Assembly: GCF_964204865.1 (NCBI RefSeq)
Contig: NC_135258.1
Span: forward strand, 10,540,001 to 10,604,000
Length of the DNA stretch: 64,000 nucleotides
From: Styela clava
Lineage: Eukaryota
Reading direction: 5' to 3'
Shown here: positions 439-12,215 of the stretch, in pieces
Position numbering within the stretch: position 1 is the first letter of the stretch
How the letters are laid out: the number at the start of each line of letters is the position of its first letter
Made by a program: the position numbers and the translations under genes
Notes under the pieces: generated by a model
The model's database searches: none
What the model saw: the letters and a program-made list of their open reading frames with translations, nothing else
What the model was told of the DNA's origin: nothing

Positions 439-3400
439 GTTACCAACCACGCGAGTTCTACAACGATGAAAGTGCAGACGTCCTTAAGACTGAAATTCTG
501 ACCAATCCTGTCAAAAAATCTGTGTGTAAGTAAAACCAGTATAGTACAATATATAATCAGAATGAAAAATTTTGCTTGGCATTCTGGGTAATTTTTTTCT
601 TCGTCGTTCCAATATCTTTTGTTTGTTTCAGCACATTTTACTTGTTTCAAATATGCAGCATTTTTGTTTATCTTGGTTTGTGTTCTGATCACTAATATTG
701 GAAAGCTGATGTATGTTCAAATGAATTACTTTACTTTTATAGACTAATGCTTCACTGAATTTCCTTCTTTCTGCTTTTTTCTTTGTTTGTGTCAAATATT
801 GTTTTCTTTGTGTTTGTTGAAGCTCTTGCACTTCTTTTTATTTTGATTTTATTCAGCAATAATGTTATATTTTAGATTTGTCCTCGTAAGTCGAATAAAT
901 GACATACGATTTTGGTGATTTAAAATAAATTTCCTTTCTTTTACCTTAATAGTTACGATTTATGAGGACAACTCTGAGCTTTTCACATGCGTTGCACATT
1001 CTTATTTATTTTCATTCACAGAGCACTGAAATTTTTGATTTACTTTGCTTTTACTATTCATGCATATCTATTTGGCTTTTAATTTTGTTTATTCGTGTAT
1101 TTCCAGCCGTTCGACCAGTTGTACCACCTTTAACCAACTTAATCTATATGGAAGGTAAGATGGTTTATATTTTACACTTTTCGTAAACAAATGGAATACC
1201 TTGTTTACTGGCTGTCAAAATGCAATTGTGGTAGTCGGTATGGAGTAACCTGAATAAGGTTCTTTATATTCATGAGGTCAAGATAATTAGTAAATAGGTA
1301 GTGTATTGAAAATACACATTGTCTTAAAGAAGATACGTTATCAAGCAGGGAAACCTGTGATTAAGTCTAACATTAATTATAACAGAAAAAAAATAAAGAT
1401 AAACATTTTTAATTATAGCAAGTTAAATTTTATGTTTGTTCATGCAACTGGCAATAATATAAGATAATAATATATATCTGATCATCTTTCATTAGTCTTT
1501 TTAAATAAACTATTCAGCTTATAAAATCGATTTTTTACTAGATGATGAATGGTCAGTCCCACAATTTGGTGGGTCATCTTACATGGAATTCAAAAAGATG
1601 TCTGCATACAGTGCTGCAACAATTCATATGACGTTCAAATCTGTTGATTCAGAAGGATTGCTTTTGTATAATGGACAAAATACAGGAAGAGATTTCATCT
1701 CACTTGCTATTATTGGAGGCTATGTGGAATTTAGGTGCAGTTAATATATAAATTTGATAATTGTCCTTCTCAGAGTGCTTGATGACCTCTTTTTAAGAAT
1801 GACTATTGGTTTGGATGGTAAAATTCCATCTTTATTTCTATATTTTGAATTTAAACACATATTTATGCATTCAGACTGATTTTGACATTACTCAAATATG
1901 ATCATGATGTAATAGCCACCATAAGAACTTGTTCAAAATGCTTTTTGAGTTAGGTTGTCAACAGTTACTTAGAATCAAGATCATGATCTCTTCATTATCA
2001 AATACACCTTGCTGAAAGTTTGGGCTGTAACCACCTGAAAGCAACTGAATGAGAGTAAGATTTGTTCTAATTTGTTTTTCATTTACCGTATTTTTCTAAT
2101 TTCTTTCATATACATTTTTAGATTTGATACTGGTTCTGGCCCATTATCATTGAGAAGTAACATACAAGTTAATGATGGACAATGGCATGAAGTAGTTTCA
2201 AGAAGAAATAGAAGAGAAGGAATGTTGATGGTAAAACATTTTATTTGTGATTTTTGTGTGACATAACAAGATGTGTAAAAATCTTGCATGATGAATGAAT
2301 TAGAATTGAGATCTCATTAATTTTGTTGTATGTGCTCAAAAATTTATTAAACAATCATGCTCGTGGAAAAATTATTTTTCCTTAACTCTCATGCATTTAT
2401 ACTGTGGGAATTGTAGATATTTTTCTTGAAGATATTTTTCTCCCACTATGTCATGAGAAATTTATGGTTTTTCATTCACTCCCACCAATTAAGCTGGTTA
2501 GACTCCTGCTCTGGTACGAGGGAGTATATGCAGTAAAATTTTCTCACAGTAATTAATTCATAAATCCAGGTCGACAATGAACCAGAAGTTGCCGGAACCT
2601 CACCATCAACAACAACTGGTGTTAACTTAGATACAAGCCTATTTATTGGTGGAACTGTCATAGAACTACAAGACAGGTAAATAGTTTTCTATTGACTTCT
2701 TTATTTTATATTTAGCATGATTACCCAAATCTGAATTCAATTTTTGTTGTTGCGAGGTTATAAACATTGAAGAACTTCTTTTAATACTCACACCATGATA
2801 TGGTATAATATTCACATTATACTGAGAAGCTAAGATCCGCATATCAATTTGTTTAACAGGCATATGTTATAACTGCAAGAATATGTTGGTTGTCCCATTA
2901 TATTTTGGGCGTTTCGAGGAACTAACTTAATAGTTGGAAATTATACATGTAACATCTCATAAACCAAAAAAAACTTTGACATGTTATCAAACGATTTAAA
3001 TAGAACTTTACAGGGACTAGATGACTTTAATACTGATCTTCCTGCTTATTTTATTCTAATGTTTCCACATATATTTTTTACAGTATTTTCAAGCAAACTG
3101 GGGTAACCAAAGGATTGACTGGTTGTATTTCTAATATTAAAGTTGGTGAACATGGTAAAAAGGCATTATCACTATCATCACAAAATACTGATGCAATAAA
3201 TACATTCAGGTTTGTTATTTGACTATAATCTACTTTTTACATTCCAACTGAGTTTTTTTCAATGAGATATTTGCTTTTCATTTAGGGTGGCAGAATGCTC
3301 CCAATCACCATGCTTGCCGAATCCATGCCGACATACCTCAAAATGTTTTATCACATATCAGCTTGAAGAATTCACTTATAAATGTGATTGTGGATCAAGA

Positions 3401-6400
3401 TATTATGGTATGTCCAAGTCTACATGATCAATTTTAATAACACTATTTATTACTGCACTAATATAACCTGCAATACTTCAATGCGAAACTAATTTGAGTA
3501 AAAGTTTTCAGGACATTGCATTTGACTCTTCCAAATAATCTATCAAAATCAATTCCACAATTATGACAAAATCGCTTATTAAATCATGCCATAGTAATAA
3601 CAGAGTTGCACATTTCTTTAATACTCATAGAAGCAAAAGCAGAAGTGTACAGCATTTGAACAAGACATAAAATTGGATTTGCTGTGCTCCAATCAGCATA
3701 GTACTACAGACATTTAGCATTTGACCGAAGCCACACAAACCCATTTGTGAATATTCTTAGTTTGTCAATGTTCAATCATTAGGTATAGGATAAATGTGGA
3801 ACACGGAATTGACTGAAATAAATGCTTAGTTAGATGGTTTACTAAAACCAAGTGCATTTGGGCAATATCTGCAACTTTAGTAACCTAAATTAGCTGACCT
3901 AACTGAATAAATTGTTTTCAATCGAAGGTGACAAATGTCAACATCGCACAACAACTGATACTTGTGCTTCAAATCCATGTCACGAAAGTTCAACTTGTGT
4001 AGAAGATGATAATTCATATAGATGTATTTGCCCTGAATCAAGAACTGGAACACAGTGTACTCGATGTAAGTGTTTCAAGTCTTTTTTTAGCAAACTTTTA
4101 TATGAAAATAAGCTACGGTAAGTTAATTTAATAGTATAACAAGTTTTTAAACGGTTAACTATGCAAAAAAATGTATTCTAATGATAAAAGAATAAGCCTA
4201 GAAAAGAATAGAATAATATAGTGTTGCTAAAGTTATAAAAGCATATTAATGATATGTTGCAGGTGGTACCACTGCACATATTCCAAGTATAACTCAAGGT
4301 TTCTAAGCCCTTACACCATAAATCAAATCTGGTCCAACATTGTAATCGATTTGTTTCCTCTATCTAAAGAGCTATTACAATATCACCATGTTTTTGTTGT
4401 TTTCAGTGGTTGCAGATTTGCCATTACCATCTACAATGGAGCCATCTTATATGCCAATGTTTGCTGGTGACTCGTATATCCAACGACCATCATTAGTTGG
4501 TGTCGGTACAAAACTTGATATTGAGATTGTATTCTATACATTCCAGTTAGAAGGTATGATTTTGGCCTTAGTGTCCAGATTGGTTATTTTAAATCAGCAT
4601 ATATATTTGCCTCCATTACTTCGAAAGTAGACTCGTGAATTTGACTCTGGCATACTTTATGAAATTTTAATATTAGATACCACACTCTCTTTATTATAGA
4701 CATTAGACATGCTATTATCCACATCATTTTAATGTATAGTATTTGAGACTATGCTATAAGGGACACATTCTCTATTTTTATGAGATACAAGTGTTTTGAT
4801 ACCATATCTTTAAATAGGAATTACAAGTCAAGTCTTCAAGTCTTGACTAACAAAGATAAATGACGTTGAAACACTATTTGAGTAAAGCTTTTCTAATTTA
4901 TAATAAACTCTAATGAAACATCAATTTTCCTCTTTGAATTATTCAATAATTGTGCTGATATAAAATTTTAGATTGTTGTTTTTTTTTTCGACAGGACTGC
5001 TCTTTTATAATGCACAATCAGATTCGGGCAAAGGAGACTTTGTTGCATTAAATTTAAGAGAGGGATATCTTGAATTTATGTATGATTTGGGTGAAGGACC
5101 GGCAATCATAAAGTAAGTACATTATGCACTACCCTGCCTTGGTAATACTAATATTTAATTAAATTCTTGTTATGATTATCAAAACGTGGTTGTTTCATCG
5201 TTCGTAAAATCTTTTGACCATTTTGTTCATCAAACATTTTTTTATATATTCAGGAGCACTGTCAAGGTTTCACTAAATGAATGGCATGTTGCAAAATTGT
5301 CTCGCATTATGAAGATTGGTGATCTTAAATTGGATGATGGACCCATCGTTAAAGGAGTATCACCGGTACAATGCTAATATTAAATATAAAATAAGCCTCT
5401 TTTGGACACTTCTTTTGTTTAAACATTTTATACATTTACTTTTCATGCTTGCTGAAGAGATCAAAGGCAAAGGTTTGTTGAATAGTGGTTTGATTTACTA
5501 CAATCTGATTACTGTATGTGATATAAGAGTCAATTTCGTGTTGTCCAATAGTACCATAACTATTCAATTTAATTAATATTTTCATTTATCTTTTGCACAC
5601 GTATTTTCAACTGAGTGAAATCTAATTATTCACCATAAATAACTTCGATATATACATGAATTCATGACTTTCTGTTAGTTTTGATGTTTATTTAAAACTT
5701 TTCACAGCACCGCCATTCCCAACTTAACCTGGGAAGACCATTATACATTGGCTCAGTTCCTGAATCTGTGACTGTTCCTCCAAGAACTCACATAACGACT
5801 GGACTTATGGGAGCCATTCAAAAGGTAGATAATGTGTCTTGTTGTTCAGTTAAACTATATTGATAATAACCTGTACCAATATGTGGTAAAACAGTCACCA
5901 TTAATTTACATCAAACAAAAGTAATTCGAGAATTAAAAATAAATTTTGTTTCATAGATAAGGAAATAAAGATTTTATAAATAAACATGATTATCTAAAAA
6001 TGTGTAGACTGATTGATACCTTGGTAGTTGAACGACTTGATATCCGAACAATTCGATAGTCGACCAAAAATATCTGGTTGATGACGTCATTGTGCACAAA
6101 AATCAATCCCATTGATCCCACAGAAATTTGCTCAAACAGTTACTGATATCAAATTTTTAATGTTTATCTTTATTAGTTTTAATCTTTATTATGCACACAT
6201 TTACATACTTATTATTGTTTAGTTACACGTTTTGTTAATATTTTCGGTATTTTGAAATGCGTAAGAACAAACTAAAAATATTACCATCGATTTTTATGGT
6301 GCAAAAAAGTTTTGATTCTCCAACAAGTCGGCAGTCGAACACTAATCCTGAACAAATTATGTTCGACTACCGGGGTATCATGGTATTTGTAAAATCAAAT

Positions 6401-9394
6401 TTAGTATCCAATATTCATTTAATGACTTCTCTTTGTTTATTCAAATTGAACTGTTAATTTAGAATCTAATAACTTTTACATCATTATGAAATCCATCTAA
6501 GGTTAGCTATGAGCTCTCATCCATTTACTGTTAGTGTGCCAACCTGACAAAATTTCATGCTCAAAATTTTCATTTCCCAAGAACTTCAGTTCTGTGGAAT
6601 TCACTACATCACACCGGTAGTTGTTTTCCTGGTCATATTGATATGAATCAGTGTTCACTAACACTGATTTCTACACTATAATTCGCTAGACTGTCAGTAG
6701 CTCTCAGTACTTCAGGGGTCACCTATAATTTCGATCAGAGATCAATCTCCTTTATTTTACAGTGTGTGACATTTATTTGAGCAAATTTTATCATATATTA
6801 TAGTTTGTTGTGAATGATGTTGAACTTCCGCGATCCCTTGCTGGAGAAAATTCAGAATCGTATCACATTCAAGCTTTCAATGGTCATGCCTGCTACAGAC
6901 AACCTTGTAACAATAATGGAGTCTGTGTACCAGTCCTTGGAAATTTTACCTGCACATGCAAAACTGGATATTCAGGGCAACTTTGTCAAAAAGGTTTGAT
7001 GAATTGTTTGATATTCATTTGGCATTTTAACATTTTACTTGAGGTTCATCAAAAATATGTCTTAGAGTTCTGTAATTAGAATGGTTGTGCATTTTCTGTT
7101 ATTTACATTTATCAGTACATAAATTTGAACATTTTTTTAATTCCCAGTTGAAAAGCCTGAAGAAATTCCAATGCTTCAAGACTCGACACCGCATGCAGTA
7201 TTTTTTGATGGAAGGGTCAAGGCACAATATAATAACTTCATCACTAGGAGGTAATTCATTTGATTATTTACTGCCGTTTATTTTTTTCATTGTACTCAGG
7301 TGATAAGATGCAGTTGCTTCAGTTATGGTCAGTTTATAAACTATGAAGTTTTCTTTAATAATTTATGGATAATTTTTGTATGCTAATTACTATCCTCATT
7401 ATTAAAAGTTGGTGTATTTATATTGTTCAATTTGTTTTGCTTTCAAAAGTGGAGAATCTGAAAAGATCATGAAGAAGTAAGAATATATTGTGTTGTTCAT
7501 TCTAATTTATGTGATTGATATACTGGTACTACTATATATGGGTAAAGCTATTTCATTTTCCGAAGTACCTTGTTGTTAAGATTTTTGTCATGCGAAATAG
7601 TTTTAAAAGTAATTATTGTATAAATTACATAATGTTTTGGGTACCTCACTTCAAATTGCAGGATACCCACTTCGACATGTAATTTCTCACATTGTTTTAT
7701 TTTGTAACAGGGTCAACTCATTAAAAAGCAACCACTTCGAACTTCAGTTGAAAACCACAGCTCACCATGGTTTAATATTTTATGATGGCAAAGCAACAAA
7801 ACGTGGCGATTACATAGCTTTGTCAGTTAGTTATGGCAGACTGCATTTAACTTTTGATCTTGGATCCGGTCCAGCCAATATTGTATCTGATTTAATGGTA
7901 AATGATGGGCTATGGAAAACTGTTAAAATTGTCAGGTAAGCTTAGGAATTAGGATACTTGTGTTTGTGTCTTACCCAATGATCGTTACCTACTGTTGTCT
8001 GTGCACAAGAATAAATTTAGATATATCTTGTTTTACATCATTGGTTGTCTACGACTTTTGTATCAGTAATCTACTCACTTCAGTTGACAGCTTGCAACTT
8101 TGCATAAAAATAGAAGGACTAAGAATTTCATATTTTACGACTTGTCTACGACTTTTGTATCAGTAATCTACTCACTTCAGTTGAAAGCTTGCAACTTTGC
8201 ATGAAAATAGAAGGACAAAGAATTTCATATTTTACTTGCCCAGCTATTGTCGAAGTTCTCAATGTTCTAATGATGATTTCTGCTAGAATAAATACAAAAA
8301 TGAGTAAAATAGATAGAAGTTTTGGGTTCCTTATTCTCAAAAACTTGCGGACTATACAAAATTACATTTATGAGAGGAAAAAGACATCATTCCATTTTTT
8401 GATGTGTTGGTTTTGCTATATTTGTAAATTATCAAACACATTTTCATTATTTTGCAGAAATGAACATCGAGCATCTCTACAAATAGAAGAAGGAACTCCT
8501 AAATTAGCATCTGCTCCACAACTCACAAAATGGCTAAATACTGAAGGAATGTTATGGCTTGGTGAGTGCACTGGAGTTTTAGCACATTTTCTGACATTCT
8601 TTTATAGTTATTACACAAAGAGTTCTTATATTCTAGAACAGGGTTACTCAACTGGTGGACAGCAGTCCGAATCCGGACCTTTGGAGTATTTGATTCGGAC
8701 TGCACCTAATTCTTTATTTTGATCATTAACCAAACTTTTGAAGTTTCATTTTATAAAATGACTTTTCTTGTTTTGAATATATCCGAAAAGAACTATATTA
8801 CCATAATAAACAATCTCGATTAGCTGATACTCATTAGCCGGTCGAGGAAGTGCGCATTTAAGGATGCCGAAATATAATTTCTGGAAACCTCGGACGGCCG
8901 GACCCAAATAATTTTAAAGTTTTGTATGCGGATCTTCTGTTCTAGAATGCGGTTTTGGTCTGTTTGCTATCACAAAATATTAGGTATTTTTCTTAATGTA
9001 ACATTTAACTAAACCGAAATATGTTGCATAGCAAGAAAGATGAATATTCACTATTTGCAATTTTATTTAACCTCTTAGTCGGAAATGATCAATTTAATTT
9101 AGCTGTTTAGTTTAATTTGATCTGCAGGGATTTGATCGGAATATACTAAATAAAATATGATAGCAAAAATCGATTCTTGATACCTTGTCATTCTTACCTT
9201 GAATTTAATTTCTATTCCAACTTGCAGGTGGTTGTGAAGCTGAATACATGCCACCTAGGCATCGAGGACTGACCAAGTCTTTTTATATGGGATTTGAAGG
9301 ATGCATCCGTAGATTCCGTATTGATGGAAATCTTTTACAATTACGAGAAGATGTGTTGAACAGACCCGGGTTAGCCACATGCCAAGACCGGTGA
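439..9394 (+). CDS. AGRN: Agrin orthologue, 3' portion (LG1-EGF-EGF-LG2-EGF-LG3); 5' exons lie upstream of the window
   Basis: GT-AG exons joining in frame: (439-525, 1107-1154 linker exons, less certain), 1542-1734, 2122-2230, 2570-2676, 3084-3209, 3286-3407, 3928-4065, 4407-4553, 4995-5112, 5254-5365, 5708-5824, 6804-6993, 7148-7250, 7711-7935, 8458-8561, 9228-9394 (TGA). LG3 reads [53 protein letters not shown] and ends [31 protein letters not shown]. These match agrin hallmarks (SNHFEL, GKATxRxDYxAL, TxGxLWLGG) better than pikachurin or perlecan. Confidence 0.9.
5458..5472 (+). CDS. AGRN: Candidate 15-nt agrin y-site microexon encoding RSKAK
   Basis: tacatttacttttcaTGCtTGCtgaAG|AGA TCA AAG GCA AAG|GTttgt. 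Phase 0-0, between ...KGVSP and HRHSQLNL, the position of vertebrate KSRK. The donor gtttgt is also used at 3210. Confidence 0.72.
6014..6380. mobile_element. MITE in agrin intron
   Basis: Terminal inverted repeats tgataccttggtagttgaac ... gttcgactaccggggtatca, with internal repeated tcgac/gaac motifs. Confidence 0.65.
7450..7476 (+). CDS. AGRN: Candidate 27-nt agrin z-site microexon ([16 protein letters not shown] instead of ITRR-VNS)
   Basis: tttgtttTGCtttcaaaAG|T GGA GAA TCT GAA AAG ATC ATG AAG AA|GTAAGA. Phase 2-2, no stop, strong donor, located in the intron just before SNHFEL. Confidence 0.7.
8045..8235. repeat. Direct tandem duplication of ~97 bp in agrin intron
   Basis: Two near-identical copies starting ttgtctacgacttttgtatcagtaatctactcacttcagttga at ~8045 and ~8142. 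Confidence 0.9.
8639..8939. mobile_element. Non-autonomous hAT-type MITE
   Basis: Ends cagggtt...cttctg, flanked by a perfect 8-bp duplication ttctagaa (8631-8638 and 8940-8947). Confidence 0.75.
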
Positions 9395-12215
9395 CACAGC
9401 ACTTTAAATCATGTCATCATAGGTACACGTGTGTATAATAAAGTTTCAACCATGTTGTAATATCAAACAGACACGGATAGCATTGACATGACACAGTGGC
9501 AGGGCAGCGATGCCATTCAGTACATCATCCCGAACCCCGGGATGTCAAAAGGTTTTATTTGAACGAAATAATAGTTCGTCTTACACCTAGTTTTTTTCGA
9601 ATTTTAAAATATGACACATGGAAGAGGCCGTTTATTTGTCTGCCCATGTGTTTGTTATTTCTGAGTCTAAGCATTGTGTTTGACACGGACAGGCAACTGG
9701 ACAGGAGTTGCCGCAAGTCTTAGCCCTATGAATTTTTCTTTGAGTCTGGCATAAATATGATAATGCATTTATTTATTTGCATGCATATATGCATATAAAT
9801 TTATTTGAATGTGGATTCTATTGAAATTTTTGAAACATATTTACCGGTAGATACATAACGTTTGACATCCCCAACATATCCCGAAAGCAACTCAATGTTT
9901 TTATTTTCTTATATTTTTGTGAATTTTATGCGACATTAACAACATGCACTATTATGTTAACAATGTAGACACTTAATCTTGTGTTTTGAAGTCACGATGT
10001 GGCACATTTTGTTTGAAAATTAGAAAATTAATTTTAGTTTGTCATGATTGCTTGCATATTTTATCTTAGAATTATTAATTTTTTTTCTCATTTTTCATAT
10101 TTTATTACATTTTTAAGACACTATTTCAGGTACAGTTCCATTTCTGAATTATAGATGTTGGTATGATTCATGTCAAAATGAAGCTATAAACCTATCAGAA
10201 AAATTAAACACAACTTATGAATTAGAAACGTAACATTAAGACAGTGTAGTAGTGGTGTGGCACATTCCATGTTTTAACAGACCTGAACTGAAGTTATGAC
10301 AATTTCCACCTTATAATATTCCACTCAACTTGAATAATAGGTCTCTGATAGCTAAATCCTATTTCCATATTGGTAAAAATGAATCTTCATAGGTGACAGA
10401 CTAATGCATGAACTTATCTTTGTCTAGGCATCTTATCTTTATACCTCACTGACAATATTTATAATTAAGCTGTCCTACTACTAATATGATTAGCTCCCTA
10501 TTCCATATCACTGCAACTGTAAAAGGTTTGAAGCGAGAGCAGCTTTAGCGTCTTAGCCTAATAGTCTAACTCTATTATATGGGAATATCCACATAAAAAT
10601 AAAAGTATAATGCCACATTCCACTATCCCAGAAAGACACAACTATTTTTTTATTTCTTTGGATTGGTTAGTATTGTTTTTATTAATAATTTTCGTGCATA
10701 TTATTTAATAACATCATCTGGTGCAAGATTGAAACAGTCTCTGAATAATTACTTTTTGGCAAAAACATTGATAAGTTTACATGCAGATAATGTAAAATAA
10801 GATTCGATGTCAACATTGATCTGGAACTTTTTAAAAGATTCCGGTTGTTGAATTTCGGTTGTATGAAATACATATGGCGATTTCGTTTTTGAACTATTGA
10901 TTTAAATTCAAGTAATAGTGATAAAATCTACTCATCCAAATATTCAGCATATTGTTTTTGTTATTCTGCTTAAAAATAAATTTTATTGAGTCCGTATATT
11001 GATGTTCAGTCTTTGATTGGTAGTCATTTTAGTAAATGTTGACTTGTCCTTCAAAGAAAAAAAAGACGTGTCGCGAAGTCTATCATATTTTACACAAAAC
11101 GCTATGAAACCCATAGGAATTTCGTTCAATAAATATTTCTTTATACAATAGTGATGCATCGCCATCCAAACGAAAATCTGATTGCGATAAAACGGTCTAA
11201 TCACATGGCGAAGCCGGTCGGACTCTATTCCGGGTTACCAGTCTATGTCGCGCATGGATTAGTTAGCCATTCCAGATTCCCGATTTTGAAACGTGAAAAA
11301 AACGTAAAATTAATGGTAATTTTCACGCGTAACGGCGCGCATTAGAATGTTTACGTCTTTCTACGCGCATTTCTGTCGGAAAAAGTAACATTTTTTGCAT
11401 TGAGGGGGGCGTGTGCAGTAATAATTAGAGGTGTGACGTCATCAAAATTGTCAATTGAAGCCTTGAACTTATAAATTCGGTAAATAAAATCGTGAATTTT
11501 AGAGTAACCATTCTTGCTATAATAGTGGTTTTGGTGTTGTTCTGTTGGAAAATAACACAAGAAAACGTTGGAATAAAATTAATTAATTACGAATAATTAT
11601 TAACCCTCTACTAGACACAAAATATCGCAAGTTCAATGGAATTTTGGAATTTTGGCTTATATATAAAAAAAAATTTTTTAAAGGAGTGCGTTTTTCATAT
11701 ATTGCTGAATAGAACTCTAGCACACGCTTTAAAAAAGCATGATTGAATCTTTAGAGCTTGATGGTTGACAAAAAAATAACCAATGTAAAATGGCACCAAA
11801 CCGACCGGCTGTGTTGTGTAAAAAAATATTCAATTCATGACAATTGAGAGAATTTAATTTTATTTCTATATTAATTCCATTGTGTTCAACGTAACTCGCT
11901 GTTGCCTCGACTTACGACAAAATAAAAGCATTACTATTAATCTGTGGACAAAAAAGTGAAATAAACTGCCCGATTATGTTTAGTTTTGATACCTATTTTT
12001 ACGATCTTGCGAATTCGTTATCGCTGTTAGAGATTTACTAAAAAAACGGAGAGTAAAATTTAGTACAATAAAAATACGCATGACGTGCAGTATATATAGT
12101 AGTATATCGCAAATACGTATTTATCGCTTCGAAATCCCCCCGGAGTGTCTCCTGAAACAGTTATCGCGATTATGCCACTCGTTAAACGAGTCAGAAGAAT
12201 TTTTCGGCTCATAAT

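What the first reader, a model, noticed from the sequence alone, without database searches (positions are those of the whole stretch)
5458..5472. Hidden basic 15-nt microexon (RSKAK) at the agrin y/A site of an invertebrate
Seen: the LG2 intron 5366-5707 splits KGVSP|HRHSQLNL in phase 0. Inside it is pyrimidine tract-TGC-TGC-AAG|AGATCAAAGGCAAAG|GTTTGT, which adds R-S-K-A-K in frame. Established: vertebrate agrin has a 12-nt alternatively spliced exon (KSRK) at the same position (GESP|KSRK|VPHT..LNL) that confers heparin binding. Inference: a homologous basic switch exists here with 5 residues instead of 4, which would place the y-exon origin before vertebrates. Gene predictors and the ORF track miss it.
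Basis: partly seen in the sequence, partly recalled or inferred. Interest (0 to 1): 0.9.

Follow-up and report, generated by a model that had tools for sequence, protein, structure and literature searches.

The report
Sea-squirt agrin y-site basic microexon
A 15-base mini-exon encoding RSKAK lies at the exact spot in a sea squirt's (Styela clava) agrin gene where vertebrates splice in KSRK, but public gene models already carry it, related sea squirts have basic inserts there too, and I found no RNA containing it.

Summary
Bases 5458-5472 (AGATCAAAGGCAAAG, RSKAK) lie in the phase-0 intron 5366-5707 of the LG2 domain, with an AG acceptor and an AAG|GTTTGT donor.

The gene is Styela clava agrin, and the site aligns residue for residue with the vertebrate y/A site (GESP|KSRK|VPHT..LNL).

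The exon is unlikely to be a chance match. Only 6 comparably splice-like in-frame 9-27-nt candidates occur in 128 kb, and this is the only basic one. Two UGC motifs lie within 12 nt of the acceptor, which is true of 0.5% of AG sites.

It is not hidden. Three earlier RefSeq models (for example XP_039263716.1) contain RSKAK and one skips it. A newer model (XP_077972423.1) uses the same acceptor but reads through the donor to end in RSKAKVC*.

Contigs of four runs that behave as RNA (spliced contigs; the tool only guesses RNA; three studies) show only the skipped junction, so I saw no direct RNA for inclusion.

Public models show alternative inserts at the same position:
- Ciona: KAIPPVKNK, with or without RQWYWKHR
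- Phallusia: KARTSVKNKRKWYMKHW
- amphioxus: GGPSNNVPE
- abalone: EPPRAQ
- lamprey and hagfish: KSRK

Verdict: probably a real, low-inclusion cassette microexon and a tunicate counterpart of the y exon. Its function and its homology to the vertebrate exon are inferred. Interest is moderate.

The parts
5254..5365 (+). Constitutive LG2 exon ending ...KGVSP. Its donor, CCG|GTACAA, is weak.
   Evidence: Spliced contigs in 4 runs. 100% identical to Styela clava agrin models. Its end aligns to GESP of vertebrate agrin.
5366..5457 (+). The 92-nt upstream mini-intron that would be removed when the microexon is included. It holds a pyrimidine-rich stretch and the AAG acceptor (AG at 5456-5457).
   Evidence: Sequence. 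12 of 17 pyrimidines at positions -20..-4. The CTAAT at 5374-5378 lies only about 11 nt from the 5' splice site, so it is an unlikely branch point. TTTAC at 5435-5439 (A at 5438, 19 nt before the AG) is more plausible; this is inference.
5446..5452 (+). Two UGC (TGC) motifs, at 5446-5448 and 5450-5452, just upstream of the acceptor.
   Evidence: At least 2 TGC within 12 nt upstream occurs at 0.46% of all AG sites in the window. The eight constitutive acceptors of this gene have 0 or 1. UGC between branch point and AG is the hallmark of SRRM3/4-dependent microexons (bioRxiv 10.1101/2024.09.17.613571).
5458..5472 (+). 15-nt cassette microexon AGATCAAAGGCAAAG, encoding RSKAK.
   Evidence: Sequence. 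Present in RefSeq models P0267, P0269 and P0270 and absent from P0268, P0264, P0170, P0263 and P0266. Not present in the contigs of 4 RNA-like runs.
5473..5707 (+). Downstream intron (235 nt) with donor AAG|GTTTGT. If the donor is not used, the frame runs GTT TGT TGA (V C stop, with TGA at 5479-5481).
   Evidence: Sequence. A confirmed donor in the same gene is AAG|GTTTGA at 6993/6994. RefSeq XP_077972423.1 (P0265) ends ...GVSPRSKAKVC. There is no AATAAA or ATTAAA in 5473-5707.
5708..5824 (+). Constitutive LG2 exon starting [15 protein letters not shown]. With the microexon included, the local sequence reads PRSKAKHRHS.
   Evidence: Spliced contigs. Aligns to VPHTxLNLKEPLYVG of human agrin 8s9p and to the mouse LG2 structure 3pve. 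Local translation.

Best explanation
Bases 5458-5472 are a genuine, alternatively spliced 15-nt cassette microexon of the Styela clava agrin gene. It lies at the same phase-0 intron position in the LG2 domain as the vertebrate y/A exon.

When included, it inserts R-S-K-A-K between ...KGVSP and HRHSQLNL.... This creates a dense basic patch (RSKAKHRH) in the surface loop where vertebrate KSRK creates a heparin-binding site and weakens alpha-dystroglycan binding.

Inclusion is low in bulk tissue. I infer that it is switched on in particular cells, most likely neurons, through the UGC-UGC element in front of the weak AAG acceptor, read by an SRRM3/4-type (eMIC) factor. The genome encodes such a factor.

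Shown here: the sequence, the position equivalence, the rarity by chance, the presence in independent public gene models, the skipped form in RNA, and basic inserts at the same site in other ascidians.

Inferred: actual inclusion in RNA (seen only through RefSeq models), tissue specificity, the regulator, heparin/heparan-sulfate binding, and common descent with KSRK.
For: - Sequence and frame.
- Gene identity: LG1-EGF-EGF-LG2-EGF-LG3 (Pfam). P0170, 'agrin-like isoform X3 [Styela clava]', is 100% identical over both flanking exons.
- Position: exon ends align to GESP|...|VPHT.LNL in dozens of vertebrate agrins with or without KSRK. In human agrin 8s9p they align with a 4-residue gap, 1751 to 1756.
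- Chance: 6 comparable candidates in 128 kb, of which this is the only basic one. The double UGC occurs at 0.46% of AG sites.
- A GTTTG-type donor is used elsewhere in this gene.
- Three RefSeq models contain RSKAK and one sibling model skips it. A later annotation run independently uses the same acceptor.
- Basic inserts at the identical site occur in Ciona intestinalis isoforms (KAIPPVKNK with or without; a MetaClust entry adds RQWYWKHR) and in the protein of GenBank record CAB3220652.1 of Phallusia mammillata (KARTSVKNKRKWYMKHW). That this record is cDNA-derived is my own knowledge, not shown here.
- KSRK with or without is present in lamprey and hagfish.
- The genome has one SRRM_C/eMIC-type match above Pfam's cut-off.
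- Vertebrate KSRK lies in the J-K loop next to the Ca2+ site, creates heparin binding and lowers alpha-dystroglycan binding (PMC6450144).
Against: - Contigs of four RNA-like runs from three studies carry only the direct 5365|5708 junction. The depth in the bins around both exons is fully explained by that one contig, with no letters between the sides.
- The current RefSeq annotation has dropped the cassette form. It keeps only a read-through form ending RSKAKVC*.
- I could not see the evidence behind any RefSeq model.
- The donor has T at +3 and +4. A second AG at 5458-5459 would give a 13-nt, frame-breaking exon.
- The insert sequences of Styela, Ciona and vertebrates are not alignable beyond being basic, so homology is not shown.
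- No orthologous intron from a second stolidobranch could be fetched.
Confidence: 0.68

Rival explanations
1. The acceptor at 5457/5458 is used, but the real product is not a cassette. The transcript runs on through GTTTGT into the intron and terminates the protein as ...GVSPRSKAKVC*, either as a truncated agrin lacking the end of LG2, EGF4 and LG3, or as an unproductive or partly spliced RNA. On this view the 15-nt cassette in the older models is a modelling choice.
For: The newer RefSeq model XP_077972423.1 (P0265, 1813 aa) ends exactly RSKAKVC. All newer full-length models skip RSKAK. The donor GTTTGT is sub-consensus.
Against: There is no AATAAA or ATTAAA in 5473-5707. No contig covers 5458-5496 in four runs. 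The older annotation spliced at 5472 in three models. The same gene uses AAG|GTTTGA as a real donor. A read-through form is what a splicing intermediate of a microexon would look like, so both forms can coexist.
Confidence: 0.15
2. It is a chance look-alike that is never spliced. The RefSeq models that contain it are artefacts, for example of a few misaligned reads.
For: No inclusion was seen in four RNA-like contig sets. The intron is AT-rich, and AAG/AAA/AGA codons are common in such sequence.
Against: About 0.016-0.04 comparable candidates are expected per intron, and about a tenth of those would be basic. The double UGC is rare. Two separate annotation runs use the acceptor. Other ascidians have basic inserts at this very site.
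Confidence: 0.08
3. It is a real cassette exon but not the orthologue of the vertebrate y exon. The LG2 J-K loop intron would be a recurrent slot for lineage-specific microexons, and the basic character in Styela, in Ciona/Phallusia and in vertebrates arose independently. The exon may then serve a different ligand.
For: Inserts at the same position differ completely between lineages: RSKAK, KAIPPVKNK(RQWYWKHR), GGPSNNVPE in amphioxus, EPPRAQ/K in Haliotis, and KSRK invariant from hagfish to mammals. Hemichordate, arthropod and other mollusc models have none.
Against: Tunicates are the sister group of vertebrates, and both carry basic inserts at the same phase-0 intron. RSKAK and KSRK share the pattern basic-Ser-basic-(x)-Lys. 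Z-site microexons are reported as conserved between Ciona and vertebrates (PMC12445529).
Confidence: 0.3

Closest known systems
Vertebrate agrin y (A) exon: 12 nt, KSRK, in LG2
   Same: It is in the same gene family and the same intron position (after ...ESP/VSP, before xxHxxLNL), between codons in Styela (the vertebrate intron phase was not checked), in the same J-K loop of LG2. It is a short in-frame cassette rich in Lys/Arg with a Ser at position 2, and skipped and included forms coexist in models (PMC6450144; PMC10139058).
   Different: It is 15 nt and 5 residues instead of 12 nt and 4. The sequence is RSKAK, not the invariant KSRK. Inclusion was not seen in RNA here. Heparin binding, the alpha-dystroglycan effect, neural enrichment and PTBP1 repression are untested.
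Ciona intestinalis / Phallusia mammillata agrin y-site inserts in public models (KAIPPVKNK with or without RQWYWKHR; KARTSVKNKRKWYMKHW)
   Same: They are ascidian agrins with the identical insertion point, a strongly basic insert, and both with- and without-insert forms in Ciona RefSeq isoforms.
   Different: They are 9 or 17 residues, apparently two consecutive microexons, and are conserved between the two phlebobranchs. No sequence similarity to RSKAK is detectable, and no second exon of the R.WY.KH type is visible in the Styela intron.
Ciona agrin Z6/Z5 microexons (PLoS Biol 2025, PMC12445529)
   Same: They are cryptic neural microexons in a tunicate agrin LG domain, presented as conserved with vertebrates. 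The Styela gene also has an annotated 27-nt z-site exon at 7450-7476.
   Different: They are at a different site (LG3), have a different regulator (Nova) and a different function (Lrp4 binding via N-x-F). The paper does not mention a y-site exon.
SRRM3/4 (eMIC)-dependent neural microexons
   Same: The length is 27 nt or less, the acceptor is weak, and UGC motifs lie directly upstream of the AG. An SRRM_C-type exon is present in the genome.
   Different: Neural specificity and SRRM dependence were not tested. The upstream intron is only 92 nt, so the long branch-point-to-AG spacing typical of vertebrate microexons cannot apply.

Membership tests
Agrin y/A-site alternative exon | The host gene is an agrin orthologue. 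| tested here: met
   LG/EGF architecture. 100% identity to 'agrin-like [Styela clava]' models that carry NtA, Kazal, laminin-EGF and LamG Pfam domains. The nearest relatives are Ciona and vertebrate agrins.
Agrin y/A-site alternative exon | The exon lies in LG2 between ...GESP and VPHT.LNL (J-K loop), as a separate in-frame cassette. | tested here: met
   Exon ends align to those residues in about 100 agrins and to human 8s9p with a 4-residue gap. The intron is phase 0 and the exon is 15 nt.
Agrin y/A-site alternative exon | The insert is short and basic (KSRK). | tested here: inconclusive
   RSKAK has 3 of 5 basic residues and the pattern basic-S-basic-x-K, but it is not KSRK and is one residue longer.
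Agrin y/A-site alternative exon | Both included and skipped mRNAs exist. | tested here: inconclusive
   The skipped junction is in 4 RNA-like runs. The included form is seen only in RefSeq models.
Agrin y/A-site alternative exon | The insert confers heparin binding and lowers alpha-dystroglycan binding. | not testable with these tools
   This needs recombinant LG2 with and without the insert. Only the basic patch PRSKAKHRHS can be read from the sequence.
SRRM3/4 (eMIC)-dependent neural microexon | The exon is 27 nt or less, with UGC between the branch point/Py tract and the AG. | tested here: met
   15 nt. TGC at -12..-10 and -8..-6. Two or more such motifs occur at 0.46% of AG sites.
SRRM3/4 (eMIC)-dependent neural microexon | The organism encodes an eMIC-type regulator. 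| tested here: met
   PF15230 (SRRM_C) matches at G000:C19:12893204-12893359 with 29.9 bits (cut-off 27) and E 3e-4. This is a single exon-sized hit, and the gene was not reconstructed.
SRRM3/4 (eMIC)-dependent neural microexon | Inclusion is neuron-enriched and depends on the regulator. | not tested
   The tissues of the runs are not known to me, and no further read-laying was possible.

The most novel reading that the evidence does not exclude
The agrin LG2 J-K-loop intron is an ancient slot for alternative microexons. It is present in all three chordate subphyla and in at least one mollusc lineage. Its basic, glycosaminoglycan-binding version arose once, in the common ancestor of tunicates and vertebrates. 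Styela RSKAK would then be a direct orthologue of KSRK, and together with the z-site exon it would be part of a neuron-specific agrin splicing programme older than vertebrates.
Probability: 0.3. Interest if true: 0.65.

Novelty: new member of a known kind. Interest (0 to 1): 0.5.

Why it matters
The published view (Banyai et al. 2010, PMC2874008) is that the y-site KSRK insert is missing from invertebrate agrins. The 2025 Ciona study (PMC12445529) pushed only the z exons back to the chordate ancestor.

A basic y-site cassette in Styela, Ciona and Phallusia would mean that both neural switches of agrin predate vertebrates. One is glycosaminoglycan/dystroglycan tuning at y, and the other is Lrp4 activation at z. 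Both can be studied in ascidian larvae, which have very few motor neurons.

The value is tempered by three points:
- The exon is already in public gene models.
- Inclusion was not seen in the RNA I could inspect.
- The function rests on analogy with KSRK.

Tried and rejected
- **Read-laying.** Four RNA-like runs showed only the skipped junction. No letters lay between the sides, and no extra depth appeared on either flanking exon. The look-up of sequencing runs and read laying allow one call each, so neural or larval runs could not be chosen or added.
- **The look-up of encoding contigs.** The orthologous introns of Ciona, Phallusia or other ascidians could therefore not be fetched, and DNA-level conservation of the 15 nt and its splice sites is untested.
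- **Search for more tunicate agrins.** A second protein search with the Styela model found no tunicates beyond Ciona, Phallusia and Styela. Transcript-derived fragments under about 1000 aa fall outside that tool's length filter.
- **Second y-site exon.** I looked for one like Ciona's RQWYWKHR in the Styela intron and found none.
Rejected. It lies about 11 nt from the 5' splice site of the 92-nt mini-intron.
- **Perlecan instead of agrin.** Rejected on the named orthologues and the single EGF between LG2 and LG3.
- **Structure prediction of LG2 with and without the insert.** Left out. It would need a joined spliced sequence with no reference, and the full models exceed the size limit.
- **Joined spliced model.** Searches used single exons by reference or public protein ids.

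Full report
**Observation.**
- The exon 5254-5365 ends ...K G V S P.
- The intron 5366-5707 begins GT and ends AG, and splits two codons cleanly (phase 0).
- The exon 5708-5824 begins H R H S Q L N L.
- Inside the intron, 5458-5472 reads AGA TCA AAG GCA AAG (RSKAK). It is preceded by a pyrimidine-rich stretch, TGCTTGCTGAAG, and followed by GTTTGT.
- If included, the flanking introns would be 92 and 235 nt.
- The stretch is single-copy in the genome.

**What the gene is.**
- Pfam finds Laminin_G and EGF pieces in the order LG1-EGF-EGF-LG2-EGF-LG3 over 1500-9400.
- A search of protein representatives with the LG3 exon led to Ciona agrins. A follow-up search found 'agrin-like isoform X3 [Styela clava]' (P0170, XP_077972422.1). 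It is 100% identical to both exons that flank the site.
- The window is therefore Styela clava agrin.
- Contigs of four runs that behave as RNA (spliced; three studies) give this exon chain: 4407-4553 / 4995-5112 / 5254-5365 / 5708-5824 / 6804-6993 / 7148-7250 / 7711-7935 / 8458-8561 / 9228 onwards.

**Is it the y/A site?** Yes.
- Local alignment of the two flanking exons to about 250 agrin-family proteins places the end of exon 5254-5365 on the conserved ...GESP. It places the start of exon 5708-5824 on VPHT.LNLKEPLYVG.
- Vertebrate entries either join these directly or carry KSRK between them.
- Against the solved human agrin chain 8s9p, the first exon ends at residue 1751 and the second begins at 1756, leaving exactly four residues.
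- The mouse LG2 structure 3pve also matches the second exon.
- According to PMC6450144, KSRK lies in the J-K loop next to the putative Ca2+ site, creates a heparin-binding site and lowers alpha-dystroglycan binding.

**Chance.**
- In this intron, five AG...GT pairs give stop-free inserts of 6-30 nt in a multiple of three. Only the RSKAK one has credible splice sites.
- I then applied stricter criteria over the whole window, both strands (128 kb): -3 not G, at least 12/17 pyrimidines at -20..-4, 9-27 nt in frame without a stop, G|GT with G at +5.
- Six sites pass, which is about 0.016 per 342 nt. This is the only one that is at least half Lys/Arg.
- Two TGC within 12 nt upstream of an AG occur at 0.46% of AG sites. 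The eight constitutive acceptors of the gene have none or one.
- The thresholds were taken from the candidate, so these numbers flatter it, but the coincidence at a pre-specified intron is still strong.
- A confirmed donor of the same gene is AAG|GTTTGA (6993/6994), so the GTTTG type is in use.

**RNA.**
- In all four runs the dominant contig joins 5365 directly to 5708, with no letters between.
- The depth in the bins covering both exons equals the contribution of that single contig to three figures.
- I therefore saw the skipped form and no trace of inclusion.
- Contigs drop minor variants. The tissues are unknown to me. The result is therefore no support rather than refutation.
- The same contigs also skip the z-site exon.

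**Public models.** The exon is not hidden.
- The 90% cluster of the Styela protein holds nine models.
- Earlier-release models XP_039263716.1/717.1 (2085 aa), XP_039263719.1 and XP_039263720.1 read [22 protein letters not shown]_039263718.1 (2080 aa) skips it.
- The newer full-length models (XP_0779724xx and XP_039263718.2) all skip it.
- The newer isoform X5 (XP_077972423.1, 1813 aa) ends ...GVSPRSKAKVC. It uses the same acceptor and reads through the donor to the TGA at 5479-5481.
- I cannot see the evidence behind these models. That a 15-nt exon would rarely be placed without spliced-read support is my inference.
- There is no canonical poly(A) signal in the downstream intron. I therefore read X5 as a partly spliced intermediate or a minor product.

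**Comparative picture (public protein models).** The table lists what is found at the identical position.

| Lineage | Insert |
|---|---|
| Ciona intestinalis RefSeq isoforms | KAIPPVKNK, with or without |
| Ciona intestinalis, MetaClust entry | KAIPPVKNKRQWYWKHR |
| Phallusia mammillata (GenBank CAB3220652.1; cDNA-derived by my own knowledge) | KARTSVKNKRKWYMKHW |
| Branchiostoma, four species or hybrids | GGPSNNVPE-type 9-mer, with or without; not basic |
| Haliotis, four species | EPPRAQ/K; models without it seen in three species |
| Lamprey and hagfish | KSRK, with or without |
| Hemichordates, arthropods, other molluscs | none |

- An alternative cassette at this loop is therefore older than vertebrates. 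The basic flavour is shared by tunicates and vertebrates.
- The inserts cannot be aligned between lineages. RSKAK and KSRK share only the pattern basic-Ser-basic-(x)-Lys. Common descent versus repeated invention stays open.

**Mechanism (inferred).**
- Protein: inclusion turns ...GVSP|HRHSQ... into ...GVSPRSKAKHRHSQ..., five Lys/Arg plus two His in eight residues. This sits on the loop where KSRK acts, and most likely tunes binding to heparan sulfate or other sulfated glycans and to dystroglycan.
- Splicing: the weak AAG acceptor preceded by two UGC motifs matches the enhancer used by SRRM3/4-type factors. The genome has an SRRM_C/eMIC-type exon above Pfam's cut-off.
- In human AGRN, PTBP1 bound to the pyrimidine tract represses the Y exon and relief occurs in neurons (PMC10139058). 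The pyrimidine stretch here could work likewise.
TTTAC at 5435-5439 is more plausible.

**Literature.**
- Banyai et al. [quoted passage not shown]
- The 2025 PLoS Biology paper describes Ciona Z6/Z5 exons and an amphioxus z candidate, but says nothing on a y exon.
- My searches found no paper on a tunicate y-site exon. The library is incomplete.

**Verdict.**
- This is most likely a real, low-inclusion cassette exon and the Styela counterpart of the agrin y exon (confidence about 0.68).
- It is a new member of a known kind rather than a new kind, and it is already in database models.
- Its main value is the comparative point that y-site splicing predates vertebrates.

**Limits.**
- No structure was predicted, because the joined LG2 has no reference.

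Noticed in passing
window 7450-7476 (+): A 27-nt microexon in the intron 7251-7710 (LG3, z/B region) encodes SGESEKIMK. It is present in most Styela RefSeq isoforms and skipped in P0270 and P0263. All four RNA-like contig sets skip it. One UGC lies 10-12 nt before its AAG acceptor.
   Followed up: partly
window 7251-7710 (+): Contigs in runs X1 and X2 carry a 'goes back' joint 7688 -> T -> 7251, and low-depth contigs cover 7251-7688 in all four runs. The intron starts at 7251, and 7689 is the A of TTCTCAC, 21 nt before the 3' splice site. This looks like read-through of a lariat branch, with the branch A misread as T. It suggests a stable lariat or circular intron RNA from the z-site intron.
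   Followed up: partly
window 8575-9087 (+), inside intron 8562-9227: RNA-contig depth is very high (hundreds to about 2000, against about 70-130 for agrin exons). Many short contigs and many variant letters are laid here. This is an abundantly transcribed dispersed repeat, not agrin expression.
   Followed up: no
window about 439-525 (+): An 87-nt cassette encodes [29 protein letters not shown]. It is present in most Styela agrin RefSeq isoforms and skipped in P0269 and P0170. It is a third alternative exon of the gene within the window.
   Followed up: partly
window 5365/5366: The constitutive donor upstream of the microexon, CCG|GTACAA, is far from consensus. It is the weakest of the eight confirmed donors in this part of the gene.
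   Followed up: no
G000:C19:12893204-12893359 (L001): This is the single match to Pfam SRRM_C (PF15230), at 29.9 bits. It is the C-terminal region that carries the eMIC microexon-enhancing domain in SRRM3/4.
   Followed up: no
window 6010-6700 (+), intron 5825-6803: Low-depth RNA contigs lie here with non-canonical joints (6267/6268 -> 6355, CA..CA) in three runs. The cause is unexplained. It may be a repeat or an indel polymorphism.
   Followed up: no
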